NCBI RefSeq assembly: GCF_902713615.1
Contig: NC_052158.1
Location: 39,113,729 to 39,177,728 of the forward strand
Direction: 5' to 3'
Source: Scyliorhinus canicula
Taxonomy: Eukaryota
DNA length: 64,000 nt
The position numbers were made by a program, and so were the translations under genes. The notes under the pieces are model-generated. The model searched no databases. It saw only the letters and a list, made by a program, of their open reading frames with translations, and had not been told where the DNA came from. Shown one piece after another: positions 46,779 to 64,000 of the stretch (the first letter of the stretch is position 1; every line of letters starts with the position of its first letter).

Positions 46779-46906
46779 CTGTGCTTCTATCTTTTCCTCT
46801 CTCCCTGCTGCCCTGGGTCTCTAGGGCACTCCTCCCATTACTGCCAGTACAGCCAGGAGGCCCAGTGTTGGGCCCGAACGAACAATCGCCCTCAGCCCTC
46901 TGACTC
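46779..46906 (-). CDS. MHC class I-like gene, putative transmembrane exon, with an in-frame TAG
   Basis: Acceptor TTTTACACAG|, donor CAG|GTGAGT. Phase 1 start matches the alpha3 exon. Reads (G)VRGLRAIVRSGPTLGLLAVLAVMGGVP*RPRAAGREEKIEAQ, with the stop at 46821-46823. Confidence 0.65.
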
Positions 46907-48237
46907 CTGTGTAAAATACACAACAGCACGTTCAGAAGCGGCGACAGTGAAATACAAGGAGCTGAAGGTCCGAAACCCCCACTTCACCAGGCGCGCTAAC
47001 GGCACTGATAATGGAGGCAACCCCATCTCCCCCAGCTCACGTCATGTACCCCTCCCCACCCACCAAACAGCAATCCACAACATGGAAACCGTTTGGCTTT
47101 TAGTTCCCTCATCAACGGGCCCTGAGATTCAGCCATTGGGTTCCCCCTTGACACCTTTCTCCTCCATTGACTTTGAGCTCCCGACTCGCTTCCTGGTTCC
47201 TGAGAGACTGCCCAATGTCGATACGTTTCCCCAGAGAGCTAGAGAATGGCCCATCTTGAATTTGCACCAGGATTCAGCTTGAAGCAAGGTAATTGCACGG
47301 GCTGCGTGTAGGACACGGCCTGTTGAATTTTCAGTCATGACTGCGTGGACTTTACCCAACACCACACCCTCCGTATGTCCACTGCACAAGGCATTGCGGG
47401 TAGAATTTTTAACCAAACCAACTATCACAGGTGGGGAGGAAGTGGGGTGGGCCAGACTGTAAGAGAAGGGGCTTTGCCATGGCTGTGACCGACAGCCATT
47501 AATGGAAGGCATCAGGGGTTCAGAATGGTTATATCCTTTTGTAAAAAGAGCAACTTACTGCTGAAACAAAAACAGAAAACACTGGAAAAACTCAGCATGT
47601 TTGGCAGCATCTGTAGAGAGAAAAGCAGAGCTAACGTTCTGAGTCCGTATGACTCTTCATCAGAATTAAATAGAGGGAGAATCATGGTGGATTTTATAAT
47701 GTAAAAGAGGGGGTAGTTAAAGGTAAAGTCGTCATAGTCCCAGGTGACCATAGGCTGCTTTCCCCTTTGAGGGGGAGAGCTGACCGGTGGTGATTCAACC
47801 TGAGAATCACCACACTTCAGGCGAGGGGCAATGTATAGGAGGGGCCTTCATGAATAATCTCAGCCGGGACAGGAATTGAACCTGGCCTTGCTCTGCATCA
47901 CGAACCAGCTGTCTCGCCAACTGAGCGAAGCGGGCTCCCGGGTAGAGGGGGTGGAGCAAACCAGAAGGTCAGTCATACGCGGGAGCACAAAGATGTTGTA
48001 TCCTTGCTTGGTCTCTGAGGTTTCAACAAACACCAGAATAGAAATGTAATGTGGGAACACTATCCCCCCTCACCACCATAGTGTTCTTGCTGTATACTAC
48101 GATGGCTCGGGGAGAATTATCATTTCCTGTGAGCTGGAGGAAGAGATCAGCCACTCACAATAAGCTTGATTGGAAGTGTCGGGCATGATGAGCAGCAGGA
48201 GTGTGTTCCATTTCTGATTGGCAGGATGTGACACCTT

Positions 48238-48865
48238 GGGCGGAATTCACCCCTACCCGGCAGGGTGGGCTGTACCTGCGCCGAGAAGTGGCGTGAACCA
48301 CTCCAGCGTCGGGCCAATTGGAAGTTGCGGAATCTTTCGCACCTTCAGGGGCTAGGCCGGCACCGGTAGGGTTGGCGCAGCGCCAACTGGTGCTGAAGGG
48401 CCTCCGCGTGTGCTGGCGTCATCCCAGCGCATGCACAGGGGGGTTCTTCTCCACGTTGGCCATGACGGAGGTTGACAGCAGCCGGCGGGGAGGGAAAGAG
48501 TGCCTCCACGGCACAGGCCCGCCCGCGGATCGGTGGGCCCCGATCGTGGGCCAGGCCACCGTGGGGGCACCTGCGGGGGCCAGATCCCCCAGCGCCCCCA
48601 CAAGGACTCTGCAGGCCGCCCATGGAGCCAGGTCCTGCTGGTACAGACCTGGTTTGATTTACGCCGGTGGGACTGGCCGAATACGGGCAGCCGCTCGGCC
48701 CATTGCAGGCCGGAGAATCGCTGGGGGGTCCGCTGCCAGTGGTCGCTGAGGGCGCGCCGCTATTCCCGCCCCCACCAAAATCCCGGCGTCGGTGCGGTAG
48801 GGCAGCATTCGTGCCGCCCCCCCGGCGATTCTCCAACCCGGCGGGGGCGTTGGAGAATCCCGCCC
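48238..48865. mobile_element. GC-rich TIR element (MITE-like)
   Basis: GGGCGGAATTC ... GATTCTCC-N17-GGAGAATCCCGCCC; homologous to 12770-13364. Confidence 0.75.
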
Positions 48866-49352
48866 ATGGAGTCTGACTGTTGGGTCCTCAACCTTTTGCA
48901 ATTTACATCAATGACTTAGATGAGGGGATCGAAGGCATGCAAGCTAAATTTGCAGATGGCACAAAGATGGGTGAGGAAGTTTTTTGTAAAGAAGACAAAT
49001 GCAGAGCGATGCTCCATTGGCGGGATCCTCCGTTTCATCGGCAACGCACTCACGCCCGGCGATTTCCCGATGACGTGGGGGCGGCCACAATGGGAAACAC
49101 TATTGGCTGGTTGCCAGGACGGAGGATCCCACTGCCAGCGGGGTGGGGGGGGGGGGCGCCACACCTGGCGGGACAGGAACTCCCACCCATGAAGTTTGCA
49201 GATGGGTATAGATAGGTTGAGTCAGTAGGCAGACAGATGGAGTACAAATCTGGCAGAGTGTGAAGTTGTTCACTTTGGGAAGAAGAATCAAAAAGCAGAG
49301 TATTATTTAACTGGTGAACGACTGCAGAATTCCAATGTGTAGAGGGATCTAC

Positions 49353-50209
49353 TGTCATGTGAGAGTACCTTTAAGAAATGGATGGTTAACCAATGTACCT
49401 TTAAGAAATGGAGCAGCCCATATTCCTGAAGTGATGTCAGAGGGGGGGAGCTGTGCTGAGATCACTTCTGCCTTTTCTGCTTTTTGGTTTCAGTTTGAGA
49501 AAGCAGCTGAAAAGTGCCTGGCTGGTTTACTGTGAGCTGTTTTGAAAGGTGAAAGCCAGTTTTGAGAAAAGAGCTTGGGTGTGTCTGTGTTTGCAGTGAG
49601 CTGGATCTGCTGTGATCTCTGCCAGGAAAGAATATCTCTGAATCATTTGGGGGGATTTAAGCTCATAATAATAATGTCTTTAACCTGATGTGTTTCTGTT
49701 TAAAGGTGTTAAGTCTTTTGGAGGTTTGAAGGAACATTTTGAGGAATTATTTAGTGTTGTATTATTTTAAGTAAGGGATGTTAAGGGATCCAATGTTTAT
49801 TTAAGAAGGTTAAGTTGAGGGCAGCACGGTGGCCTAGTGGTTAGCACAACCGCCTCACGGCACTGAGGTCCCAGGTTCGATCCCGGCTCTGGGTCACTGT
49901 CAGTGTGGAGTTTGCATATTCTCCCCGTGTCTGCGTGGGTTTCGCCGCCACAACCCAAAAATATGCAGAGTAGGTGGATTGGCCACGCTAAATTGCCCCT
50001 TAATTGGAAAAAATAATTGGGTAATCTAAATTTAAAAAAAAAAAGAAGGTTAAGTTGAATTCTTGGAATAAACATTGTTTTGTGTTTAAAAACCCACGTG
50101 TCCATAATTGTACTACCACACCTAGGGGACAAGCCGTGTGCTTCAAACGCAACAATCCATTAAACTCCATGATACATTTTGGGGTTCTGAAAATGGCGCT
50201 CCTGTAACA
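49353..50209 (+). mobile_element. Solo LTR carrying a V-SINE insertion (49819-50042)
   Basis: TGTCA...TAACA ends with a 4-bp TSD CTAC (49349-49352 / 50210-50213). The SINE is flanked by a 16-bp TSD AAGAAGGTTAAGTTGA and has an A-tail. Confidence 0.85.
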
Positions 50210-50802
50210 CTACAGTTCTACTGCATAAGTGATAAAAGGTTAGTATGTGGGTATAGAAAATAATTTAGAAGGCGAATGAAATGCTGTCCTTTATTACGAG
50301 AGGAATTGAACATGGTGATTGAAAACAATCGAACGTAACATAAGGCTGTTACGCTTCAGTTATACAGGGCGTTGGTGAAACCAGTTCCCGAATACTGTGT
50401 GCAGTGTTGGTCTCCTTATTTAAGGAAGAATGTAAATGCGTTGGGGGGGGGGTGCAGAGGATGTTTACTAGATTGATACCTGGAATGAGTGGGTTGCCTT
50501 ATGAGGAAAGGTTGGACAGACCGAGATTGCTTCCACAAGAGTTTAGAAGAGTGAGGGGCAACTTGATTGAAGTAAATAAGATCCTGCACGGTCTCAGCAA
50601 GGTGGAAGTGGAAAGGATGTTTCCTCTTGTGGGTGAGTCCAGAACTAAGGGGCACTATATGAAAATTTGGGGTTCCCCTTTTAGGGAAGAGATGAGGAGA
50701 TTTTTTTTCTCTGAGCGTGTTGTGCGACTTTGGAGCTCTCTGCATCAGAAGGCGTTGGAGACAGAGTCACTGAATATTAAAGTCCAACAGGTTTGTTTCA
50801 AA

Positions 50803-50837
50803 CACGAGCTTTCGGAGCGTAGCTCCTTCCTCAGGTG
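50803..50837 (-). ncRNA. Minimal hammerhead ribozyme within an inverted PLE pseudo-LTR pair (50778-50958)
   Basis: The reverse complement reads CAC-CTGAGGA-A-GGAGC(TAC)GCTCC-GAAA-GC-TC-GTG. The opposite-strand copy at 50845-50877 lacks C3. Confidence 0.75.
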
Positions 50838-52188
50838 AATTGACATGAGGAAGGAGCATTGCTCCGAAAGCTCGTGTTTGAAACAAATCTGTTGGACTTT
50901 AACCTGGTGTTGTAAGACTTCTTACTGTGCTCACCCCAGTCCAACGCCGGCATCTCCACTGAATATTAAGGTGGAGGTCGATAGATTCTCATTAGGCAAG
51001 GGAATGAAAGGTTATTGGGTGCAGATGGGAATGTGGAACTCCAAACATAAACAGGATCTTATTGACTGGCGGAGAAGGTTTGAGGGGCTGAATGACCTAT
51101 TTTTGCTCCTATTTCATATGTCAGAGTTTGTTAATATCAATTGTAGGTTAATGGAAGCAGAAGATGGGTATTGATTGTCTTCCGGCCCATATAAAAAGGC
51201 TCATTCAGTGACTGTGGGCACCATGGGGGCTGGAGTGCAGCTTTAGCCCCGGGTAACAAAGTTTTAATTTAATTTTGCAAGTTACCGTCAAAGTTTTGGC
51301 ACAGGACCCCACCAGGATTCTGGCCTTGGGTGACTGTGTGGAGTTTGCACGCTCTCCCCGTGTCTGCATAGGTTTCCTCCGGGTGCTCCGGTTTCCTCCC
51401 ACAGGCCAAAGATGTGCAGGTTTGGTGGATTGGCCATGATAAACTGTCCCTTAGTGTCCAAACATTAGGTGGGATTACAGGACATGGGCAGGGGATTGGA
51501 TCCAGGGAGGGTGCTCTTGCAGAGGGTCAGTGTGCATTCGATGGGCTGAATGGCCTCCTTCTGGACTGTAGGGATTCCATGGTTGTGTATTTTTGTCCAC
51601 CTTTCCTAAAGTGTGGCACCTGAAGCTGAACCATTGGTCTATAAAGCCCGCTCGACAATGCCTAGAGTTTATACTCTATGCCTCTATTTATAAACTAAAG
51701 TAACCCATCTGCTTTAATAAGAGTGCAACAAATAAGAGTAGGAATGGACCACAAGGCTAATTGAGCCCGATCGACCAGTCTATACAATCAGGGCTGTACA
51801 TGTGGCCTTCAACTCCATATTCCCCCTCTTCTCCCCATTATCCCTATCCCTTTATTCCCGGAGAGATCAAAAAATCTCTCAATATCAACCCTGAATGTAG
51901 TCAATGATGGGGCACCTATCACCATTTGTGGTAGAGAAATGCAAAGATACGCCATCACCTTTTGAGTGAAGACATTTCTCATTTCAATCCTTTAAAAAAA
52001 ATTTTAGAGTGCCCAATTGATTTTTTTTCTATGAAGGGGTAACCCTGCACATCTTTGGGTTTAGGGGGCGAAACCCACGCAAATATGGGGAGAATGTGCA
52101 AACGCCACACGTACAGTGACCCAGGGCTGGATTCGAACCCGGGTCCTCAGCGCCGTTGTCCCAGTGCTAACCACTACGTCACATGCCG

Positions 52189-53102
52189 CACTCAGAGGGT
52201 CAGTACTGAGTGAGCACAGCACTGTCAGAGGATCAGTACTGAGGGTGCACTGCACTGTTAGATGGTCAGTACTGAGGGAGTGCTGCACTGTCAGAGGGTC
52301 AGTACTGAGGGATTGCTGCACTGTCAGAGGGTCAGTACTGAGGGTGCACTGCACTGTTAGAGGGTCAGTACTGAGGGATTGCTGCACTGTCAGAGGGTCA
52401 GTACTGAGGGAGTGCTGCACTGTCAGAGGGTCAGTACTGAGGGATTGCTGCACTGTCAGAGGGTCAGTACTGAGGGAGTGCTGCACTGTCACAGGGTCAG
52501 TACTGAGGGAGTGCTGCACTGTCAGAGGATCAGTACTGAGGGAGTGCTGCACTGTCAGAGGGTCAGTACTGAGGGTGCACTGCACTGTTAGAGGGTCAGT
52601 ACTGAGGGTGCTGCACTGTCAGAGGGTCAGTACTGAGGGAGTGCTGCACTGTCAGAGGGTGAGTACTGAGTGAGCACTGCACTGTCAGAGGGTGAGTACT
52701 GAGGGAGTGCTGCACTGTCAGAGGGTCAGTTCTGAGGGAGTGCTGCACTGTCAGAGGGTCAGTACTGAGGGAGCACTACACTGTTAGAGGGTCAGTACTG
52801 AGGGAGCACTACACTGTCAGAGGGTGAGTACTGAGGGAGTGCTGCACTGTCAGAGGGTCTGTACTGAGGGAGTGCTGCACTGTCAGAGGGTCAGTACTGA
52901 GGGAGTGCTGCACTGTCAGAGGGTCAGTACTGAGGGAGCACTACACTGTTAGAGGGTCAGTACTGAGGGAGCACTACACTGTCAGAGGGTCAGTACTGAG
53001 GGAGTGCTGCACTGTCAGAGGGTCAGTACTGAGGGAGTACTGCACTGTCAGAGGGTCAGTACTGAGGGAGTGCTGCACTGTCAGAGGGTGAGTACTGAGG
53101 GA
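52189..53102. repeat. Tandem array of about 27-28 x 33 bp (ACTGTCAGAGGGTCAGTACTGAGGGAGTGCTGC)
   Basis: Clear 33-bp period with point variants, adjacent to a V-SINE at about 52000-52185. Confidence 0.95.
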
Positions 53103-53909
53103 CATGTTGTGCCACCTTTCTCAGGATTCGACGATATGGTTGCCAAAGGGTGGGATTTTACAGCGCTTTCCGCCGACAGCGTCTTCCAGTCCCACCAAAA
53201 GCAGTCCCACCCCCATCTCACATGGGCTGAGCCACGCAAAATGGCGGAGACACCGGCGATCCCGTCAGTGGCCAATCGCGAGCTGCGTCTGGCTTTGATA
53301 AACACGCCATGGGGGGGGGTGGAATATCACACCCCAAGTTCTCACTTTTCAAAATGGTGGTTGTTCATCGTACTCTTTTCCCATATTAATCTTCCAAAAG
53401 TGCATCACTTCACACTTCTCCACGTTAAACTCCATTTGCTGTGCTTTTGTCCTTTTCACCATCCTGTCCATGTGACTCTGAACCCTATAACTGCTCCCAT
53501 CACCATCGACTACTTTGCCAAGTCTGCATAGTGGATAATGCTGCTTCCTCCTCCTGGGCCTAGTTTGGTGATGTGACAATTGAAAAGATCAATGAGCCCA
53601 TTTGCAGGAAGGGTATCTCCGAAGGTCGGGTGCTCAAAACTAGGGGTCACAATCTGAGGATGAGATCGGACCATTTAGGACAGAGATGAGGAGAAATTTC
53701 TTCACCCAGACTCAGTGGTGAGTCTGTGGAGTTTGTTACCGCAGTAAGTAGTTGAGGCCAAAACTGTTTGTTTTCAACAGAAGCAGTTAGATATAGCACT
53801 TGGGGCGAATGGGATCAAACGGTATGGGGAGGGGGAGGCCGGATTAGGCTATTGAGATGGATGATGAGTCATGATCATATTGAATGGCGGAGCAGGTCGG
53901 AGGGCCGAA

Positions 53910-54105
53910 TGGCTGGTTTAGCTCACTGAGCTAAATCGCTGGCTTTTAAAGCAGACCAAGCAGGCCAGCAGCCTGCACGGTTCGATTCCCGTACCAGCCT
54001 CCCCGGACAGGCGCCGGAATGTGGCGACTAGGGGCTTTTCACAGTAACTTCATTGAAGCCTACTCGTGACAATAAGCGATTTTCATTTTCATTTTTTTCA
54101 TTTCC
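53910..54105 (+). mobile_element. Second-family SINE with (ATTTTC)n tail
   Basis: Head GGCTGGTTTAGCTCACTGAGCTAA, B-box GGTTCGATTCCC, tail GTGACAATAAGCGATTTTCATTTTCATTT. Fragments recur at about 11170, 23905, 25250, 40550-40745 and 56180-56300. Confidence 0.75.
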
Positions 54106-54482
54106 TTCCTCTATTTCACCGTTTCTGTGAATTCAGTCAAGTTAGTTTGAAAGGATTTGCCTGTCAGATCTGTGGTGGCTCTGATTGAGTGTCTTTAAAA
54201 CTGAGCGAGACCCAGACTGGCGGGTAAGTGTTTTACCCCCAACCCCACCACGCTTGGCATGCTTATAGGTGAAGTTCAGTTGGCCAACGCTTATAGTGTG
54301 ACCTCTCCTCACACTCTCTTTTGTTTAACCAAACTCTATCCCTCCCACTAACACCATCACCTCCGCTAACCGGTGGCTGTCTCCCCCCCCCCCCACCCGC
54401 CCCCCCAAATACCAAATAGCTGGCACAGGTATGTAGTCCCAAATGGCCACCCTCTGTGCTCTATCATTCTCTGGTAACTTAC

Positions 54483-54758
54483 CTGCCTCCACACTCAGTG
54501 TCTTGGACAGGCTACTGTGATGAACCTGACATGTATAGCTCCATGGGTCATTGTCCTCGAGTTTCACGAGAATCTCCATTCTGTACGTGTCATCATGGTT
54601 TGGCACCACTGTCACCGTAAGGTCGTCCGGCACGGGCTCTCCATTCTGCAGCCACGTGGCATTGATGGCACGGGGGTAGAAGGGAGTGACGAGGCACAGG
54701 AGAGTCATGGGCACCTCGTCACTGGAGATGTTTTTGAAAACCAGCACTTCAGGGGCAA
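54483..54758 (-). CDS. MHC class I-like alpha3 (Ig C1-set) exon
   Basis: 276-nt exon, phase 1-1, acceptor TTCTTCCTCAG|, donor CAG|GTAAGT. Reads APEVLVF...LLCLVTPFYPRAINATWLQNG...VPNHDDTY...YTCQVHHSSL with no stops. Confidence 0.93.
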
Positions 54759-54894
54759 CTGAGGAAGAACAAAAATATTAGAGGTACTATATCAAGGAAC
54801 TTAATTCACCCCACAGATTACATTCAGAATCCTGATCCGGGTCGCACTCGGAATCCAGATCACATTATGAATCTAACTGTAATATTCCACTTGC

Positions 54895-55164
54895 CTTTTC
54901 TTTCCAGAGCTGCTTTACCAGCTCGAAGAGTTCTCTGCATATTTTGAATACAGCTGTTGTTTAGTGCCCGGAACAAATCGATATGGGTGTCGAGTATATT
55001 TTGAAATTTGTCTTTTATCAAGTTCAATGCTCCTGTCGCGCTGCAATGCAGTGTGGCCATTTGACAATGAATCTCTCCATAGACACTGTAGATCTTTACC
55101 AAGTCGATGGTGCTCATGTTATTTTGTAGAGTGCAGCTCCAGAGCCCCTGGATGTACTTGACAT
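54895..55164 (-). CDS. MHC class I-like alpha2 exon (highly divergent, non-classical)
   Basis: 270-nt exon, phase 1-1, acceptor TTTTTTGCAG|, donor AAG|GCAAGT. Cys101 and Cys164 equivalents present (LWSC, NSCIQ), Q96 and G120 kept, and it ends GKAALERK like class I alpha2. Confidence 0.85.
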
Positions 55165-55377
55165 CTGCAAAAAATGAATCGGTCAACCAGGCATTACTAG
55201 CTGAATTCTTAATGCATCTCCCTGTTGGGTAAAGCATACGCGCACTCTGCCCAAAACAGTCCCACCTGACATTTTAAATCATTTCTCTAGGTTGAGAGCG
55301 GTTCTGTTCCTCAATCTGCCGTCATCACCCTGACCCTCCACAAACCAACTATCGAAGCCACTATTCTTGCACACCAT

Positions 55378-56023
55378 GGCCGGGATTTCGGAGATGTGTT
55401 GATGCCAGCATAAACACCGGAGTGGTGCACGGCGAAGTTGACGGGCCTACTGGCCCAGTGATTCAGCATCCCTCAGGAGGCCAGCACGGTGCCGGAGCGC
55501 TGCGCGCTGCTCCAGCATTGAAAGGCGGCCCTGCACTGCCAGCGCGGGTCTGCGCATGCACGCGGCAGCCGTCTCCACGCCGGCGCCGAGCAATGTGGCA
55601 GAGCCCTACAGCGGGCCCGCACTGAAGGAGGTAAGCCCTCTCCAGATCGCGGGCGCCCGCCCATCGGTAGCCCCCGATCGCGGGCCTGGTCGCCGTGGAG
55701 CCTCCCCCGGAGTCAGATTCCCCCGCATACCCCCCCCCAAACAGGATGGCTACTGCGGCTGCAGGTCCGAGCTCTCGCCGGGTGGTACCAGGTTGGAACC
55801 ATGCCAGCGAGACTCGTCGGAACTCGGCTGGAATTTGGCCGGTCGACTGCGGAGAATCACTGCGGGGCCTCTTTCAGTGACCCCCGACTGGCAGTGCGCC
55901 GACCACGCGGGCGCGATTGGTGGTGACCAGAGAATCACTTCCTGCTGTCGGAGCGGCCTATCGTGGATTTTGGGCGGGAACGGCAATTCTACGACCCGGC
56001 GCGTGCTCGGAGAATCCCGTCCC
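55378..56023. mobile_element. GC-rich TIR element (MITE-like)
   Basis: GGCCGGGATTTC ... GGAGAATCCCGTCCC; homologous to 12770-13364. Confidence 0.75.
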
Positions 56024-56347
56024 ATGTCTCATCTGCAACTCCCTTTTCTTTGAAAGTGTGACCCTCGCCAAAATCATTTCCATCTTTCCACACTTCAATA
56101 GGAACAGAGGGGCAGGAGTCGGCCATTCTGCTCTCGGAGTCTGATCTTCCATTTCATATGATCATGGCTGATATGGTTATAATAATAATCTGTATTATTG
56201 TCACAAGTAGGCTTACATTAATACTGCAATGAAGTTACTGTGAAAAGCCCCCAGTTGCTTTTTTGAAGCCTACTTGTGACAATAAGCGATTTTCATTTCA
56301 TTAATTTTCAAGTCATTAGGAGACAAATCAAATGTTGGCATTGATTG

Positions 56348-59300
56348 TGTAATGAACTCCAACTGGCTTTATTGGTTGGCCAATTGGAATATGAGCTCCC
56401 TCAATGATAGCTCATTGAGGGGGCCCATATAATCATCTGTGTAGGCTTTGTGAGCCAGTCTTACGTTGACTGGACTGCTAGCAGCACTGTTTGTTGCTGC
56501 TCCTGTAATATCGTTATTGTAAATAAATATTGGTGTGGTGACGGAACTCCTGCCTCCCGTGGATTATTACAGTGGTGACGAGGTAAACTAAGAATTTTGC
56601 GGAGACCAGCTGCCGCACTCGGAGGGTAAGCCTTGCCATTTTAAAAATGCCATTTTTTGGAAGGTTAGAGGCATTCGACCCGGCTATTGAGGACTGGTCC
56701 CAGAATGTGGAGAGAATGTGTTACTTCTTCCGGGCAAATGATATACTGACGGACGAAAGGAGACGGCTTATCCTGCTGTCGGCGTGCGGACCCTCCGGAC
56801 ACGAAAACTTTCCAAGAAGTAACGGAATTGGTGAAAGAGCACTACGACCCAAAACCACCCCTCATTTTGCGTAGGTACAGATTCTACACAGCGAAGCGGG
56901 AAGACAGGGAGTCAGTCACGAATTTCTTGACCCGCCTGAGAATGCTGGCGGAAAAATGTGAGTTCGGCCCGACGCTAAATGAAATGCTTCGGGACCGGTT
57001 AGTGTGTGGTATAAACGACCTCACAATACAGAAACACCTGTTGGCGGAAACAGAGCTAGACTGCAGGCAGGCGTTACAGCTCGCACTGTCCCTAGAAAAG
57101 GCGGCAAGTGGGGCGCAGGAACTACAGGGCACGCCAATGGAGGTAGATACCTGTGAGTGGGACTACCACAACGGGTCCTGCTACCAGATAGCCGCTCTCA
57201 GGAAAAACCTGATGAATAGAGGGAAAAAGGAAAACCCCAGAACTGCCCCCAAGTCTGCCAGGACTAACTGGAGACAGAGGGAAGTACCGGCTGAGGCTCC
57301 CCCAACAGAGAAGGACCGTTTCTGGCAACAGGCAGAGTGCGGTAACAACGACAGAAACCCTAGAAGGAGGTGGCAAAAGAGGAATAGCAGGTGGGGACGC
57401 AGGCAAGTACACAACCTAGACGCCCTATCCTCCTCCGAAGGGGAACAATTATATAATATTGCAACGAAGAAAGCAAAACCCATTAGGATTACCCCACGGG
57501 TGAACGGGCGGCCGACAATAATGGAATTAGACACGGGTGCGGCCGTATCAGTAATGGGAGTGGCAGCATTTAGAAAAATCAAAGATGGACTCCAGCCACT
57601 AACCCTAACAAAAACATTGACGAAACTTAAAACCTACACGGGGGAACCCCTGGAAGTTCTAGGCACGACTCATGTACCTGTGGAATATGAGAAACAATTG
57701 CTCAGATTACCGTTGACGATAGTAGAGGGCTCCGGACCGAGCTTAATTGGACGGAACTGGCTGAAAGACCTAAAATTAGATTGGATGGAAGTTTTCCAGA
57801 GTGGAAGCGGGCAGTTGAGTGGAGTACTCCAAAAATACCCGGAGGTCTTCCAGGAAGGTTTGGGGGAAATCCTAGGCGCCAAAGCAACTTTGCACATGGA
57901 GCCAGAAGCCCTTCCGAAATGTTGTAAGGCCAGGCCAGTACCTTTTGCATTAAGAAAGAAAGTAGATGACGAAATAGAAAGGTTACGGCGCATTATCAGA
58001 CCTGTACAGTTCTCGGAATGGGCAGCGCCAGTGGTACCAATTTTGAAGCTAGACGGCTCGATACGTCTCGGTGGAGATTTCAAACAGACAGTAAACAAAT
58101 ACGCACTGCTGGACAAATACCCAATCCCAAAAATAGACGACCTATATGCAAAATTGGCAGGTGGGCTTTTGTTCACGAAACTAAACATGAGCCACGCCTA
58201 CCTGCAGTTAAAACTGGACAAGGGCTTCCAGAAGTTCGCTACGATCAACACCCTGAAGGGCCTTTTTCGTTACACTAGGCTACCTTTCGGAGTGTCATCA
58301 GCCTGCGCTATATTCCAGCGTACGATGGAAAATATTCTGCATGGACTACCGCAGGTGGCGATTTATTTGGATGATGTCTTAATAACGGGTAGGACGAACA
58401 GGGAACACTTAAGGAACCTGGAGGAAGTGCTCAGGCATTTCGCAAAGGCAGGCGTACGGCTAAAAAGGGAAAAATGTGTTTTTCTGGCCCCACAAGTGAT
58501 GTACCTGGGATATAAAGTAGACAAGTCAGGCTTACACCGATTGGAAGACCGAGTGAGGGCAATAAAAGAAGCCCCAGCTCCCATCACGTACCAGGAGTTA
58601 CGATCGTTTCTAGGATTGGTAACCTATTATGGAAAATTTATTGAAAATAGGGCGTCCATCCTAGAACCCCTCCACCAGCTGCTAAAAAAGGGGCAAGAAT
58701 GGAAATGGTCCTGCCGCCAAAACCGAGCATTTAGGGACATTAAGGAACAGCTGTCATCCGAAAATGTCCTAGAGCATTATGACCCAAGGAAGGAGTTGGT
58801 GGTCACTTGTGATGCATCCCCCTATAGGGTAGGAGCCATCTTAGCCCATAGGGGAAGGCATGGGGAAGAACGGCCAATAGCCTATGCTTCGAGGACCTTG
58901 GTGATGGCTGAGAAGAAGTACGCCCAAATCGAGAAGGAAGGACTGGCGGTGATATTCGCAGTAAAAAAATTTCACCAGTATCTGTACGGGCGGAAATTCA
59001 CCATAGCGACGGACCATAAACCGTTATTAGGGTTATTAAAAGAAGACAAGTCAATACCCCCGATTGCATCAGCTAGAATCCAACGCTGGGCGTTGCTACT
59101 GGCGGCATATAGATACATTCTGGAGCACAGACCGGGAACGAGAGTAGCAAATGCAGATGCTTTGAGCAGACTTCCCCTCCCGGACACTCCGCCGCAAATA
59201 CCAAAAGTAGAGGAGACAGTAATGACTCTAAATTTTTTGGACACCCTACCAGTAGACGCACAACATATTCGGTTGTGGACGCAAAAAGACCCAGTTTTAG

Positions 59301-60914
59301 CCAAGATGAAGCATTTATTGCTAACAGGGGAACTGGAAAGACCAGTGGAGCGCCAGATGCACCCATACTGGAGCAGAAGGGACCAAATAACCGTAGAAGA
59401 CGATATCCTATTATGGGGAGCCCGGGTAATCGTCCCAGCTCAGGCAATCTTAATCGAGTTACATCACGGACACCCAGGGGTGTCTAAAATGAAGATGCTA
59501 GCTCGAAGCTACGTTTGGTGGCCAGGTTTGGACACCGACATAGCAGCCTTGGTACGTCGGTGCCAGGAGTGCCAACAGGGGCAAAGAGTGCCACCAGCGG
59601 CGCCATTGCACCCGTGGGAATGGCCAGGCATATTGCGCCCGTGGGAATGGACCCGCCTGCATATTGACCACGCCGGCCCTTTCATGGGCTCAATGTTTTT
59701 GGTGATAGTGGACGCCCACTCCAAATGGTTGGACGTCCACCGGGTAAACACGGCAAGCACAGCATCGACAATTAAAAACGAGGCGTTTGCAACACATGGA
59801 CTTCCGGAGGTATTGGTGTCGGATAACGGAACGGCATTCACAAGTGGGGAATTTGGAAAATTCCGGAAGGAAAACGGAGTCCGTCACATCAAAACGGCCC
59901 TCTACCATCCAGCGACCAACGGCCTGGCAGAGAGAGCGGTCCAGACACTTAAAGCAGGACTCAAGGAGCAGCCGGCAGCGTCAATGGACATAAAGCTCTC
60001 CCGCTGGCTGTTTGATTACAGGACCACACCGCATTCTACAACGGGCATACCGCCAGCTGAACTCTTAATGAGAAGGCGGCTGCGAACGAGGCTGAGTCTC
60101 CTTTTCCCAAATTTAACGGGGAAAGTGGAGAAACAACAGGAGGCCCAACGCAGGGGGCATGATAATAGTCGGCAGCAGAGGCATTTCCAGGTGGGGGCAC
60201 CGGTTTGGGTCAAGAATTATGGGAATGGACCAACGTGGGCCAAAGGCATGGTAGAGTCCCAAACAGGGCCCATATCCTATGAGGTTTCAATAGGAGGTAA
60301 GGTGCTGAAGAAACACCTAGACCAAATAAGGGCAGCGGAACCACACCTGGAGGCAGGCGAAGCAGGACCACCTCAAGCTGGGATAGCCCAGACGGAAAGG
60401 ATACCCACACCCCAGCCCCGAGCAATTTCTCCAGACCTCGTCATCCAGTCGTCAGAGTCGGAGATGGACACACTCGACGAGGCCGCCGCGACACCTCTCC
60501 CCGAGGAGGAGGAAGAACAACTTCCAAGGGGGTCGTCAAGGAAAAGACGGGCACCTATAAGGTACACCCCGCCCACTTCGGAGAACGACCCGGCGGACGA
60601 CACAGAGGTGACAGACCCAGACATGAGGAGCAGGAAGAAGCTCAGAGGAATCCCAGCTGGCAGGAATTCCTCGGACCTTGGGGGGTAGGGGTGTAATGAA
60701 CTCCAATTAGCTTTATTGGTTGGCCAATTGGAGTATGAGTTCCCTCAATGATAGCTCATTGAGGGGGCCCATATAATCACCTGTGTAGACTTTGTGAGCA
60801 GTCTTAAGTTGACTGGACTGCGAGCAGCACTGTTTGTAGCTGCTCCTGTAATATTGCTATTGTAAATAAATATTGGTGTGGTGACGGAACTCCTGCCTCC
60901 CGTGGATTATTACA
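56348..60914 (+). mobile_element. Full-length Ty3/Gypsy LTR retrotransposon (Gypsy B, Mag-like)
   Basis: LTRs at 56348-56571 and 60692-60914 (about 11 substitutions plus 1 indel by eye), 5-bp TSD GATTG. PBS TGGTGACGAGG (tRNA-Ser(GCU)-like) at 56573; PPT GGGGGGTAGGGG at 60680-60691. Confidence 0.96.
56647..60688 (+). pseudogene. Gypsy B gag-pol: one frameshift/deletion near 56790-56830, then a 1286-codon open frame
   Basis: Motifs: protease LDTGA, RT YLDD (first Asp replaced in KLNMSHAY, 58184-58186), RNase H CDAS/EKE/TDH, integrase HHCC and HIDHAG/SDNG/AERAVQ. Confidence 0.9.
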
Positions 60915-61289
60915 GATTGTAAGAGGAATGGACTGTAAAATTAGGGAAGTTTCAATGCAGCTGGACGCAGGCTGAGGTGAGACCATATCCGGAGTACTGT
61001 GCCGAATTTTAGTTTCCTTATTTAAAATAAAATTATATCATTGCTAGCCGTGCCTGGAAACAGCTTTGTGATTCATGTATCAGCTCACTCAGACCCTTCA
61101 GAGTTCTGCAATCTTTCCAATTGAAATTATATGCTGCTTCTCTATATATCCTTCTAAAGTGAACAAGATCACATTATCCCGCATTATCCTCCATCTGCCT
61201 TATTTTTGCCCACTCACTTAACCTGTCCCGTATGCCTTGACAGATTCTCTACCTCCTCTTGATAGCTGATGTTCCTACCTACTTTTTAA

Positions 61290-61970
61290 CAGTGCAGAAG
61301 GAGGCCATTCAGCCCATTGAGTCTGCACTGACCAACAGAAAGAGCAACTGACTAGGCCCACTCCCCTGCCCGATCGCCGTGACCTCAAAGCCCCAACTAA
61401 CCTGCACATCTTTGGACATTAAGGGCCAATTTAGCGTGGCCAATCCACCTAACCTGCACATCTTTGGGTTATGGGAGTGAGATCCACGCAGACACGGGGA
61501 GACCTGCACATCTTTGGACTGTGGGAAGAATCCGGAGGAAACCAATGCAGTCACGTGGAGAAAGTGCAAACTCCACACAGACAGTCACCCAAGATTGGAA
61601 TCGAACCCGGATCCCTGGCAGCCTGAGACAGCAGTGCTAACCACTGTGCCACCTTGTCACTCAAATTGAAATAAAAAAGGGGGCTATCTTGGTATCATAG
61701 ACAAATTTACTTAGGATACATTTGCTCCATCCAAGTCATTGATATAGATTGTTGCAGTAAGAAGTCTTACAACACCAGGTTAAAGTCCGACAGGTTTGTT
61801 ACAAATCACTAGCTATCGGAGCACAGCTCCTTCCTCGGGTGAATGTTTCACCTGAGGAAGGAGCTGCGCTCCGAAAACTCGTGTTTGAAACAAACCTGTT
61901 GGACTTTAACCTGGTGTTGTAAGACTTCTTACTGTGCTCACCCCAGTCCAACACCGGCATCTCCACATCA
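61290..61970. mobile_element. V-SINE (minus, 61290-61660) and inverted PLE pseudo-LTR pair (61756-61970) with a hammerhead-like motif at 61849-61883
   Basis: Matches to the other copies. The hammerhead core is intact but stem III is non-palindromic (GAAAACTC). Confidence 0.75.
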
Positions 61971-62276
61971 TAGATTGTTAGGTAATTGAGGGCACAGTTT
62001 GGGTTCCTGTGGACACCCACTAGTTAGTTTACCAATCTGAAAACTACCCATATATTCCTACTCTCTATATCCTTCTATAACCTCCCCAATACTGGATTCC
62101 AGCAGATTCCCAATGACAGATGTTCAGCTAATTGGCCTACATATCCTTGCTTTCTCTCTCTCCCACTTTCTTGAATTAAGGCGTTAAGTTTGTTATTTTT
62201 CAATCCACCGGAACCGTTCCAGAATCTGGAATCTTGGAAGATTATAACCAAATACGTCTGCTATTTGTGTCACCAT

Positions 62277-62927
62277 GGCCGGGATTCTCCTAGACTCCGT
62301 GCCAAAATCGCGCCCGGCGCGGGGACGAAGAATGGGGCCTCAGATCCACAATTGAGTCCAAAGCTGGGACGTGATTCTCCGGCAACCAGAGAATCGCCGC
62401 CAGCCGCGTGCAAGTAGTCGACGGGGTGCCGGGCGGGGGCCATTGAAACAGACCCCCACGGCGATTCTCTGCGGTCGACCGGCCAAGATCCAACATGAGT
62501 CCACCTGGCAGGAGCTCCGACTTGCAGCCACAGTGGCCGTCCTGGTAGGGGGGTGGGGCTATCAGACTCTGAGGGGGGGGGCGGGGGCTTCACGATGGCC
62601 AGGCCCGAGATCGGGGGCCACCGATCGGCACGGCGTGTGATCTGGAGGGGGGTGGGGCCTAGTTTCCTCTGCATCAGCCCGCTGGGTGGTTCCGCCATGT
62701 TGCGCGGGCATGACACGGAAGCGGTTGCCATGCGCATATGCTGAACCGCACCCAGCAGTGCAGCGCCGCGTATTGGTGCTGGGGCTGCGTGGAGCACTCC
62801 GGCACCATGCTGGCCCCCTGTGGGCTACAGAATCGCTGGGCCAAGAGGCCCGTTGATGCTGGCATGAAACACACCGGTGTTTAGGCCGGCGTCAATGCTT
62901 AGCCGCGTTTTTGCAGAATCTCAGCCC
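62277..62927. mobile_element. GC-rich TIR element (MITE-like)
   Basis: GGCCGGGATTCTCC ... GCAGAATCTCAGCCC; homologous to the other copies. Confidence 0.75.
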
Positions 62928-63821
62928 ATATCGTTTAAGGCCTTAGAACGCAGACCATCTGCTCCAGGGGACTTGTCAGCCCTGAGGCCTAATCATTTTT
63001 CTAGTACCCTTTCCAAGGTGACAGAGATTGTACTAAGTTAGTCCCTCACTATCATTTCCTGCTTTTCAAGAATCTTTGGGAACTCTTCTAAGCCGTCTAC
63101 CGTGAAGACCGACACAAAATTCTTGTTTGACGCCCCTGCCATTTCTTTGCTTTCCAATATCATTTCCCCAGACTCACCTCCCAGCATTCCAATAACTGGT
63201 TTAGTTGTGCTTTTCCTATTCAAATACTTGGAGAAATGTTTACTATCTGTTTTTATATTACTGGCTAGCTCTCTCTTATGCTCTGTTTTATTGTCTCTTT
63301 ATTATCTTTTAGGTCATTCTTTGTTGGTTCTTACAATCTGTCCGATCCTTGGACTTACCTATGAGGCAGCAGTGCTAACCACTGTGCCACCGTGCTGCCA
63401 CTCCCAACTACACGAGTATCTGTTCCCCTGACTATACTGTCTCCCATCATCACCCCATTCCTCCTCACCCCCAGTCAATCTATAGGGTGCCATCAAGAAC
63501 CACGATCTGTCCACCTTACAGCCCCACAGAATCATCATCAATGGTATCTCTGCCTGCCCCTCGCACTGTTACCTCTGATGTTCCTCTTCCTGTTTGGCAT
63601 CTACATGCTTCCCCATGGTGACAACAGCTTTCATTTTTTTATATGAGTACTGAAGGCATCCAACGCAGCCTCATCGCCACCTCTCTCAACTCCTCCATTG
63701 TTGCGATATTACCAGAACACTCATCCGGAATCCAGCATTGGGTGAACCAAAAGTGCCTCCAGTTAAATATTGGGAAGGCAGCAGATGGATGTCTTGCGGT
63801 GCAGTGGATACCGTCCCTACC

Positions 63822-64000
63822 TCTGAGCCAGCAGCTCCGGATTTGATTCCCACTCCCAGGACTTGATGGCCAAGGAAGGCGTGTTCATAATGCGGCTAAA
63901 CAGATCGCATGTCAACCTACCAAATCCTTCCGACACGCCAATGGCTGGTGGTAAGAGCGGGAGATACTCCTGGTTAGCCACGCTTGATGTGGAGTGGAGC
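63822..64000 (+). mobile_element. tRNA-derived SINE 5' part, truncated by the window edge
   Basis: A-box-like GCGGTGCAGTGG and B-box-like GATTTGATTCCC. Confidence 0.45.

What the first reader, a model, noticed from the sequence alone, without database searches (positions are those of the whole stretch)
54483..55164. Extremely divergent MHC class I-like molecule: non-peptide groove, extra cysteine pair, and possibly a W-category beta chain
Seen (manual alignment to HLA-A2 numbering): C101 and C164, Q96, G120 and K146 are kept. Peptide anchors are lost (Y123>H, T143>I, W147>F, Y159>A, Y171>T), as are YDG>VYG and D122>I. There are two additional Cys (about 124 and 131-133) and a 2-residue deletion, while alpha3 is a normal C1 domain. 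No alpha1 exon is visible in the 8.8 kb upstream. Established: sharks have several non-classical class I lineages (UBA-UEA) and the W-category, whose beta chain has a class I alpha2-like plus an Ig domain and no alpha1. Inference: a novel or highly derived lineage that is unlikely to present peptides classically, with WB as a testable alternative.
Basis: partly seen in the sequence, partly recalled or inferred. Interest (0 to 1): 0.75.

Follow-up and report, generated by a model that had tools for sequence, protein, structure and literature searches.

The report
Catshark UFA gene, alpha2 and alpha3 exons
These two exons belong to the small-spotted catshark's copy of UFA, a very divergent, reportedly lipid-binding MHC class I-like gene of sharks and rays that is already named and has a solved structure, so the find is real but not new.

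Summary
Window 55164-54895 and 54758-54483 (minus strand) are two phase-1 exons, joined exactly in RNA contigs of four studies. They encode an alpha2-like domain with four cysteines and an Ig C1 domain.

The gene is not novel and is not a W-category beta chain. A 243-bp alpha1 exon lies 2,141 bases beyond the window's end. A leader exon lies about 22 kb further upstream. A short tail exon is at 46906-46821. Together they give an intact 317-aa class I heavy chain.

All three extracellular domains hit PDB 8GM8 best ("shark nonclassical MHC class I, UFA"). In a tree the protein sits inside a 100/100 clade with 8GM8, and that clade's branching follows the shark orders. The alpha2 exon is single-copy. 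The second CD1-like gene, UGA (PDB 9CH4), is a separate locus about 0.78 Mb away. A 2023 paper already lists this locus as MHC-Ib and says UFA maps to this cluster.

The scan met this gene before: note s1-268226 covers its alpha1 exon and reached the same identification.

- All UFA proteins end in a short hydrophobic tail with no cytoplasmic domain.
- Alpha2 diverges faster than alpha1 or alpha3 between the two Scyliorhinus species.
- The gene span the 2023 paper's supplement lists from NCBI's annotation covers both UFA and its upstream neighbour.

The parts
54895..55164 (-). Exon 3 of UFA: the alpha2 domain (90 codons, phase 1). It has four cysteines, and its N-glycosylation sequons are NMS and NNS.
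   Evidence: Translation. PDB 8GM8_A residues 85-174, E 5e-15. Single copy in the genome. Exon ends confirmed by RNA contigs.
54759..54894 (-). Intron 3, 136 bp, of the rare GC-AG type.
   Evidence: Donor AAG|GCAAGT and acceptor CCTCAG|. The joint 54758|54895 is seen in one contig in each of four runs from four studies.
54483..54758 (-). Exon 4 of UFA: the alpha3 domain, Ig C1-set (92 codons).
   Evidence: Pfam C1-set, E 4.6e-15. 8GM8_A residues 177-264, E 2.9e-32. One variant, 54533 G>T (codon ACA>AAA, Thr>Lys, the residue before the second Ig cysteine), appears in one study's contig.
46821..46906 (-). Coding part of exon 5: a 28-residue connecting peptide plus hydrophobic C-terminus (GVRGLRAIVRSGPTLGLLAVLAVMGGVP), then stop codon TAG at 46823-46821. 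There is no cytoplasmic tail.
   Evidence: tblastn with the basking shark orthologue. Sequence and TTTTACACAG| acceptor. Nearly identical C-terminus in the S. torazame RefSeq model P0031. Tail conserved across sharks and rays. Its join to exon 4 was not checked with reads.
46907..54482 (-). Intron 4, 7,576 bp.
   Evidence: Bounded by the CAG|GTAAGT donor after 54483 and the acceptor before 46906. The reads laid on 50300-54482 there belong to dispersed repeats.
55165..64000 (-). The part of intron 2 that lies inside the window. The whole intron is 10,976 bp. The alpha1 exon sits at window-equivalent 66383..66141 (L004:2383..2141). The leader exon sits at window-equivalent 88379..88301 (L019:1581..1503). 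Both are outside the window.
   Evidence: Alpha1 exon: 8GM8_A residues 3-82, E 3.9e-19; Pfam MHC_I 32.1 bits against a cut-off of 28.3. Leader: 85% identical to the S. torazame leader, E 9.5e-9; it begins with ATG and ends G|GTAAGG. The five exons assemble into a 954-bp open CDS.
56828..60688 (+). Ty3/gypsy-type retroelement ORF (1,286 codons without a stop) inserted in intron 2 on the opposite strand. It is a passenger, not part of the gene's product.
   Evidence: RVT_1, RNase H-like, integrase zinc-binding and integrase core domains.

Best explanation
The two exons are exons 3 and 4 (alpha2 and alpha3) of the single-copy UFA gene of the small-spotted catshark. UFA is a nonclassical MHC class I (MHC-Ib) lineage shared by sharks and rays.

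Gene structure (shown). The gene has five coding exons spread over about 41.6 kb on the minus strand: a 26-aa leader, an 81-aa alpha1, a 90-aa alpha2, a 92-aa alpha3 and a 28-aa hydrophobic tail. It encodes an intact 317-aa heavy chain, and spliced transcripts exist.

How it most likely works (inferred from the nurse shark orthologue and the literature, not shown for the catshark):
- The heavy chain pairs with beta2-microglobulin.
- Its alpha1/alpha2 platform forms a hydrophobic groove that has lost the tyrosine, threonine and tryptophan residues that clamp peptide ends.
- The groove holds lipids rather than peptides, so the molecule works like CD1 without being a CD1 orthologue by sequence.
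- A lineage-specific second disulfide (mature C115-C122) probably staples two neighbouring floor strands of alpha2.
- The protein has no cytoplasmic tail. It is held at the membrane by a GPI anchor or a minimal transmembrane stub, and it cannot carry a CD1-style tyrosine sorting motif.

Which lymphocytes read it is unknown.

The confidence given is for the identification as the catshark UFA orthologue. My odds that the catshark protein binds lipid are lower, about 0.65.
For: Identity of the gene:
- All three extracellular exons have PDB 8GM8_A as best hit: alpha1 E 3.9e-19, alpha2 E 5.1e-15, alpha3 E 2.9e-32. The entry's title is 'Crystal structure of shark nonclassical MHC CLASS I, UFA'.
- The other CD1-like shark gene, UGA (9CH4), matches a different catshark locus: alpha1 E 6e-36 and alpha2 E 7e-39.
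- The alpha2 exon is unique in the 4.2-Gb genome.
- In maximum-likelihood trees the catshark protein lies in a 100/100 clade with 8GM8. It is sister to S. torazame, then Mustelus, then the lamniforms, then the orectolobiforms (8GM8 among them). UGA and the other class I lineages fall outside.

Integrity and expression:
- The 954-bp CDS is open. Every exon after the first has an AG acceptor; three introns have GT donors and one a GC donor.
- Contigs of 858-2110 nt from four studies carry the spliced alpha2-alpha3 junction, with zero differences in alpha2.

Map position:
- The locus lies on S. canicula chromosome 13 inside LOC119975565, which the supplement of PMC10751288 marks 'MHC-Ib'.
- It is 23.6 kb downstream of a UDA-like gene and about 2.2 Mb from beta2m and BRD2.
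- This fits that paper's statement that UFA maps in the MHC-Ib cluster that holds UDA and UEA.

Function:
- 8GM8 chain B is beta2-microglobulin.
- Hydrophobic residues make up 39-47% of UFA alpha2 against 32-37% in other class I. Charged residues make up 14-22% against 21-29%.
- Peptide anchors are lost.
- PMC12562908 reports, from a personal communication, that crystal structure and mass spectrometry suggest UFA and UGA bind lipids like those of CD1d.

Extra disulfide:
- Both cysteines are present in 14 of 15 UFA sequences. In the one exception, Heptranchias, both are replaced together (Y and W).
- In an AlphaFold model of the S. torazame orthologue they sit on adjacent strands, 111-116 and 121-126.

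Tail: an uncharged run of 13-21 residues is followed by 0-4 residues in all 13 UFA sequences that have a C-terminus. Other class I chains have 19-29 residues after the membrane segment.
Against: - Lipid binding rests on a review's 'personal communication' and on the title of a PDB entry. The primary paper is not in the searchable library. Nothing was measured for the catshark protein.
- The catshark alpha2 is only 37% identical to that of 8GM8 and 74% to that of its congener, so the ligand could differ.
- The exon 1-2, 2-3 and 4-5 joins rest on homology, splice signals and reading frame. The single read-laying run covered only exons 3 and 4.
- The fold was modelled for the S. torazame orthologue, not for the catshark protein. 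It gave no distances, so the disulfide is inferred.
- CD1 is not among the 50 nearest solved folds, so 'CD1-like' is a functional analogy only.
- The S. canicula tail lacks an obvious small-small-small omega site with a normal spacer, so GPI anchoring is uncertain.
Confidence: 0.93

Rival explanations
1. UFA does not present antigen to T cells. It is an MHC class I-fold molecule with another job: a lipid carrier or sensor like zinc-alpha2-glycoprotein, or a stress or NK-receptor ligand like the GPI-anchored ULBP and RAE-1 proteins or Qa-2.
For: It has no cytoplasmic tail and a GPI-like C-terminus. It is a single copy in sharks, with no alpha2 variation across four studies. No receptor is known. 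The NNS sequon sits on the alpha2 helix just before the second canonical cysteine, where a glycan could hinder docking.
Against: It keeps alpha3 and pairs with beta2m in the orthologue's crystal. It sits in the MHC. The groove-forming helices are present in the model. Specialists describe it as CD1-like. Low polymorphism is equally typical of CD1 and MR1.
Confidence: 0.2
2. The exons are the beta chain of a W-category MHC molecule, with one groove domain plus one Ig domain and no alpha1.
For: No alpha1 exon lies within the window upstream of alpha2.
Against: A phase-matched alpha1 exon and a leader exon lie upstream and give one open 317-aa frame. RNA contigs extend 708-715 nt 5' of the alpha2 exon. 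That is more than a leader alone would need, although what those bases hold was not read. All full-length orthologues have three extracellular domains. The solved orthologue pairs with beta2m.
Confidence: 0.01
3. It is a decaying or non-functional copy, whose odd alpha2 reflects relaxed constraint rather than a new function.
For: Alpha2 is the fastest-changing domain: 74% identity between the two Scyliorhinus species against 87% and 89% for alpha1 and alpha3. There are long introns with a retroelement insertion and a non-canonical GC donor.
Against: The frame is open across five exons. Correctly spliced transcripts occur in four studies. Orthologues are retained one per species across six shark orders and in rays, with the four-cysteine pattern, the NAT sequon and the tail conserved.
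Confidence: 0.03

Closest known systems
Nurse shark UFA (PDB 8GM8, chain A; UniRef A0ABF7PPZ1_GINCI)
   Same: It is the best hit for all three extracellular domains and lies in the same 100/100 clade. It shares the short alpha1, the four-cysteine alpha2, the INATW sequon in alpha3 and the domain order.
   Different: Identity is only 46% in alpha1, 37% in alpha2 and 60% in alpha3. The catshark alpha1 is two residues shorter. The crystallised construct lacks leader and tail, so the tail cannot be compared.
Shark UGA (PDB 9CH4), the second CD1-like MHC-Ib lineage
   Same: It is MHC-linked on the same chromosome, about 0.78 Mb away. It has a short alpha1 with related sequence (35% identity) and crystallised with beta2m.
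   Different: It is a separate locus. Its alpha2 is conventional: it keeps YDG-like and K-W motifs, has two cysteines, and hits ordinary class I at E 1e-14. It is only 20% identical to the UFA alpha2. It falls outside the UFA clade.
CD1 (lipid-presenting class I-like molecules of tetrapods)
   Same: It has a reported hydrophobic, lipid-binding groove, pairs with beta2m and shows little or no polymorphism.
   Different: No sequence-level membership was found. In the alpha2 and alpha3 searches CD1 chains appear only through the Ig domain. CD1 is absent from the 50 nearest folds. Only 5 of 23 family members give a weak Pfam MHC_I_3 hit. UFA is MHC-linked and has no cytoplasmic tail, so it carries no tyrosine sorting motif of the kind some CD1 isoforms have (that comparison is from my own knowledge).
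Chicken YF1*7.1 (Rfp-Y nonclassical class I that binds lipids and lipopeptides)
   Same: It is among the nearest solved folds after UFA itself (ranks 3, 4, 7, 8 and 10). It is the only other PDB family touched by the alpha2 exon, at E about 1.5 over the last 24 residues. It is a nonclassical, MHC-linked molecule with a hydrophobic groove.
   Different: It is a recent offshoot of avian classical class I with a conventional alpha2 and transmembrane tail. The sequence similarity to UFA is not significant.
W-category MHC (WA and WB chains)
   Same: It is an ancient lineage present in cartilaginous fish, and its membrane-distal domain has class I-like motifs.
   Different: The W-category has class II-type two-domain chains. 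This gene has alpha1, alpha2 and alpha3 on one chain, and its orthologue pairs with beta2m.

Membership tests
UFA lineage (elasmobranch MHC-Ib) | Closest solved or named relative is UFA for every domain, while the paralogous lineage UGA maps elsewhere | tested here: met
   8GM8_A is the top hit for alpha1, alpha2 and alpha3. 9CH4 is the top hit for a different locus. PDB titles name the two entries UFA and UGA.
UFA lineage (elasmobranch MHC-Ib) | Monophyly with known UFA in a tree that includes other class I lineages | tested here: met
   100/100 clade of 23 rows and of 18 rows. The topology follows the shark orders. UBA, UCA and UEA are not labelled in the data set, so their absence from the clade is inferred from unnamed shark class I rows.
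UFA lineage (elasmobranch MHC-Ib) | Map position in the MHC-Ib cluster with UDA and UEA, between beta2m/BRD2 and the extended class II genes | tested here: met
   The locus lies inside LOC119975565, marked 'MHC-Ib', on NC_052158.1. A UDA-like gene lies 23.6 kb upstream. B2M is at 41.36 Mb. The 'UDA' label of the neighbour is inferred from its 60% identity to a nurse shark 'nonclassical MHC class I antigen'.
UFA lineage (elasmobranch MHC-Ib) | Hydrophobic groove that binds lipid | not testable with these tools
   Only composition was measured: 44% hydrophobic and 18% charged in alpha2, against 32-37% and 21-29% in other class I. Peptide anchors are lost. Lipid binding itself is reported only second-hand.
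UFA lineage (elasmobranch MHC-Ib) | Heterodimer with beta2-microglobulin | not tested
   Shown only for the nurse shark orthologue (8GM8 chain B is beta2m). The catshark pair was not modelled.
MHC class I heavy chain (Pfam MHC_I + C1-set) | Leader, alpha1, alpha2 and Ig C1 alpha3 on one chain, with phase-1 exons and the canonical alpha2 and alpha3 disulfide cysteines | tested here: met
   Gene model. The alpha1 exon scores 32.1 bits on MHC_I, above the 28.3 cut-off. C1-set E 4.6e-15. The alpha2 exon alone gives no Pfam hit. The whole alpha1-alpha2 of the congener's orthologue matches MHC_I positions 14-179 at 42.1 bits.
Classical (peptide-presenting) MHC class Ia | Conserved residues that bind peptide termini (Y7, Y59, Y/R84, T143, K146, W147, Y159, Y171) and high polymorphism | tested here: not met
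   Only Y59 and K146 remain. Y7>H, T143>I, W147>F, Y159>A, Y171>T, and the region around 84 is deleted. There were no alpha2 differences among four studies.
W-category beta chain (WB) | Two-domain chain: leader joined directly to one groove domain plus one Ig domain, paired with a WA chain | tested here: not met
   The alpha1 exon is present and in frame. Full-length orthologues have three domains. No search for a WA gene was made.
CD1 | Sequence or fold membership in the CD1 family | tested here: not met
   No CD1 chain is among the alpha2 hits, the 60 listed alpha1 hits or the 50 best Foldseek matches. Weak MHC_I_3 hits occur in 5 of 23 relatives only. The functional resemblance is not affected by this.

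The most novel reading that the evidence does not exclude
UFA may be a tail-less, probably GPI-anchored lipid-binding class I molecule. Its alpha2 helix may evolve quickly between close species. If so, it could not use CD1-style endosomal sorting and would sample lipids in the secretory pathway or at the surface. Its ligand or receptor interface would differ from species to species. Neither point appears in the papers I could read. The unseen primary UFA paper may already cover them.
Probability: 0.35. Interest if true: 0.4.

Novelty: already known. Interest (0 to 1): 0.22.

Why it matters
UFA and UGA are the evidence that lipid-type antigen display is as old as jawed vertebrates, so a correct catshark gene model is useful to comparative immunologists. 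This report gives exact exon coordinates for the S. canicula gene. The gene span the 2023 paper's supplement lists from NCBI's annotation appears to merge UFA with the neighbouring UDA-like gene. This may be why no stand-alone catshark UFA protein turned up in the protein search. The report also records the tail-less C-terminus and the conserved four-cysteine alpha2. It does not open a new question.

Tried and rejected
- Leader exon, false lead 1: L004:5184-5219 matched the N-terminus of the partial S. torazame model. It is a reverse-transcriptase fragment of a repeat.
- Leader exon, false lead 2: L004:3593-3643 resembled other species' leaders but has no ATG and no usable donor. The true leader was found only with the S. 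torazame RefSeq model.
- P0002 and P0006 from the representative search are repeat proteins (an ankyrin-like protein and a bacterial repeat protein). P0003 matched in eight stretches at 21% identity and was not read. None was taken as a relative.
- Searches of the paper library for '8GM8' and '9CH4', and for a primary UFA or UGA paper, found nothing relevant.
- dN/dS between the two Scyliorhinus species could not be computed.
- The catshark protein itself was not folded, aligned as an id or sent to the large protein searches. The S. torazame orthologue (P0031:612-880, 84% identical) stood in for the fold. The catshark sequence was used only inside scripts.
- Complex prediction with beta2m was not run.
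- Pseudogene and WB readings were considered and rejected (see the rival explanations).

Full report
**The sequence.**
Window 54483-55164 holds two minus-strand exons.
- The first is 55164..54895 (270 bp). It follows a TTTTTTGCAG acceptor and ends at AAG|GCAAGT.
- The second is 54758..54483 (276 bp). It follows TTCCTCAG and ends at CAG|GTAAGT.
- Both begin in codon phase 1, as MHC domain exons do.

The second exon is an Ig C1-set domain (Pfam E 4.6e-15). The first hits no MHC family in Pfam.

**Expression.**
I laid Logan contigs of four runs from four studies on window 50300-55300. Each run had one contig (858-2110 nt) that covers both exons and skips exactly 54759-54894. The ends of the skipped part are CT..GC on the plus strand, so this is a GC-AG intron.
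- The contigs stop matching at 55164 and at 54482/54483.
- They run on for 708-715 nt on the 5' side in three runs and for 311-848 nt on the 3' side, so both exons sit inside a longer spliced RNA.
- Alpha2 shows no difference in any run.
- One run carries 54533 G>T, which changes Thr to Lys next to the second Ig cysteine.

**The rest of the gene.**
I fetched that DNA.
- Alpha1: a 243-bp phase-1 exon at L004:2383..2141 with clean splice signals. It scores above Pfam's MHC_I cut-off.
- Tail: tblastn with the basking shark orthologue found an exon at window 46906..46821 that ends in TAG.
- Leader: it is not within 20 kb upstream. It turned up only with the leader of a S. torazame RefSeq model, at C13:39202107..39202029. 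It begins with ATG and ends G|GTAAGG.

The five pieces give an open 954-bp CDS of 317 codons: leader 26, alpha1 81, alpha2 90, alpha3 92 and tail 28. The introns are 21,917, 10,976, 136 and 7,576 bp. Intron 2 carries a Ty3/gypsy-type ORF on the other strand.

**Identification.**
- Each extracellular exon has PDB 8GM8 chain A as its best match: E 3.9e-19, 5.1e-15 and 2.9e-32.
- For alpha2 nothing else in the PDB scores better than E 1.4.
- Foldseek's table gives the entry titles. 8GM8 is 'Crystal structure of shark nonclassical MHC CLASS I, UFA' and 9CH4 is the same for 'UGA'.
- 9CH4 is the best match of a different catshark gene at C13:38381014-38387716. The correspondence is therefore reciprocal.
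- The alpha2 exon has no second copy in the genome.
- Against 1.84 billion representative proteins, alpha2 finds three orthologue clusters (basking shark, bamboo shark, stingrays). The other three hits are repeat-inflated or multi-stretch false positives.
- A search with the basking shark protein lists orthologues in eight orders of sharks and rays, including the 8GM8 sequence itself from nurse shark.

**Phylogeny.**
I built trees from the UFA set, a UDA-like set, other shark class I proteins, four bony-vertebrate class I proteins and, in the second tree, the catshark UGA orthologue.
- The catshark protein lies in a 100/100 clade with 8GM8.
- Inside that clade the order is Scyliorhinus, Mustelus, lamniforms, orectolobiforms, Heterodontus, Pristiophorus, Heptranchias.
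- A multi-copy ray clade is sister to the sharks in the first tree; in the second that split is unresolved.
- This is the pattern of a one-to-one orthologue in sharks.

**Map position.**
- The contig length, 163,470,629, equals that of S. canicula records.
- The supplement of PMC10751288 lists NC_052158.1 39159019-39241900, LOC119975565, minus strand, as 'MHC-Ib'. My gene spans 39160549-39202107 on that strand.
- The same listed gene span also covers a UDA-like gene at 39225720-39236843.
- S. torazame has a 903-aa RefSeq protein that fuses the same two genes.
- B2M lies at 41.36 Mb.

I aligned the protein to a catshark classical-type class I (P0082), which keeps the canonical residues. UFA shows:
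- Y7>H; Y59 kept; the alpha1 C-terminal region around 84-86 deleted;
- Q96 kept; the canonical cysteines kept with 60 rather than 62 residues between them;
- T143>I; K146 kept; W147>F; Y159>A; Y171>T.

The register in the 118-133 strands depends on gap placement. MAFFT puts the two extra cysteines in the columns of F126 and W133.

The extra pair (mature C115 and C122) is present in 14 of 15 UFA sequences. In Heptranchias both are replaced at once, by Y and W. In an AlphaFold model of the S. torazame orthologue (pLDDT 84.7) they sit on adjacent strands 111-116 and 121-126. A cross-strand disulfide is therefore likely but not measured.

**Mechanism.**
Shown here:
- a class I heavy chain with an intact frame;
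- spliced RNA, low variation and MHC linkage;
- a more hydrophobic and less charged alpha2 than other class I;
- loss of the peptide-end clamps.

Shown for the orthologue: it crystallised with beta2m.

Reported second-hand: lipids like those of CD1d.

Inferred: the catshark molecule does the same.

Two features are absent from the papers I could read.
- Every UFA with a C-terminus ends in 13-21 uncharged residues with at most four residues after them. Other class I chains have a longer membrane segment followed by 19-29 cytoplasmic residues. This suggests a GPI anchor or a stub and rules out a cytoplasmic sorting motif.
- Alpha2 is 74% identical between the two Scyliorhinus species, against 87% for alpha1 and 89% for alpha3.

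**Comparison with known families.**
- UFA: the gene is a member by every test I could run.
- Class I: it is a class I molecule by architecture.
- Classical class Ia: it is not one.
- WB chain: it is not one.
- CD1: it is not a member by sequence or by nearest-fold ranking. Chicken class I, chicken YF1*7.1, MR1 and UGA come before any CD1. It may nevertheless work like CD1.

**Verdict.**
The finding is real and well observed. Its main inference is right that the lineage is non-classical and wrong that it is new. Its alternative is refuted. The lineage is already known.

Noticed in passing
window 56828-60688 (+): An uninterrupted 1,286-codon ORF of a Ty3/gypsy-type retroelement sits inside intron 2 of UFA on the opposite strand. 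It has reverse transcriptase, RNase H and integrase domains. I only observed it.
   Followed up: partly
G000:C13:39159019-39241900 (the window plus about 64 kb upstream): LOC119975565, as listed from NCBI's annotation in the supplement of PMC10751288, spans both UFA and the upstream UDA-like gene (exons at C13:39225720-39236843, minus strand). S. torazame XP_072329338.1 (903 aa) is such a fusion of the same two genes. This may be why no stand-alone catshark UFA protein turned up in the protein search.
   Followed up: partly
G000:C13:38381014-38387716 (-); loci L010 and L020: This is the catshark orthologue of shark UGA (PDB 9CH4): alpha1 E 6e-36 and alpha2 E 7e-39. It lies about 0.78 Mb from UFA. 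Its alpha2 is conventional, unlike that of UFA.
   Followed up: partly
window 54759-54894 (-): The alpha2-alpha3 intron uses a GC donor (AAG|GCAAGT). Spliced contigs from four studies confirm it.
   Followed up: yes
window 54533: A G>T variant appears in one study's contig. On the coding strand it changes ACA to AAA (Thr>Lys) at the residue before the second alpha3 cysteine. It is the only difference seen in the two exons across four studies.
   Followed up: no
window 46821-46906 (-) and the orthologue proteins P0001-P0029: All UFA proteins of sharks and rays end in a short hydrophobic segment with no cytoplasmic residues. This looks like a GPI-attachment signal, but no GPI predictor was available.
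   Followed up: partly
protein P0015 (Heptranchias perlo UFA orthologue): Both lineage-specific alpha2 cysteines are replaced together, by Y and W. W is the residue that conventional class I has in that column. This is either a reversion or a retained ancestral state in a basal shark order.
   Followed up: no
window 50634-54140: Very high contig depth at 50.8-51.0, 51.3-51.6, 52.1-53.1 and 53.8-54.1 kb, with many odd joints, marks dispersed transcribed repeats inside intron 4. No extra UFA exon was seen there.
   Followed up: no
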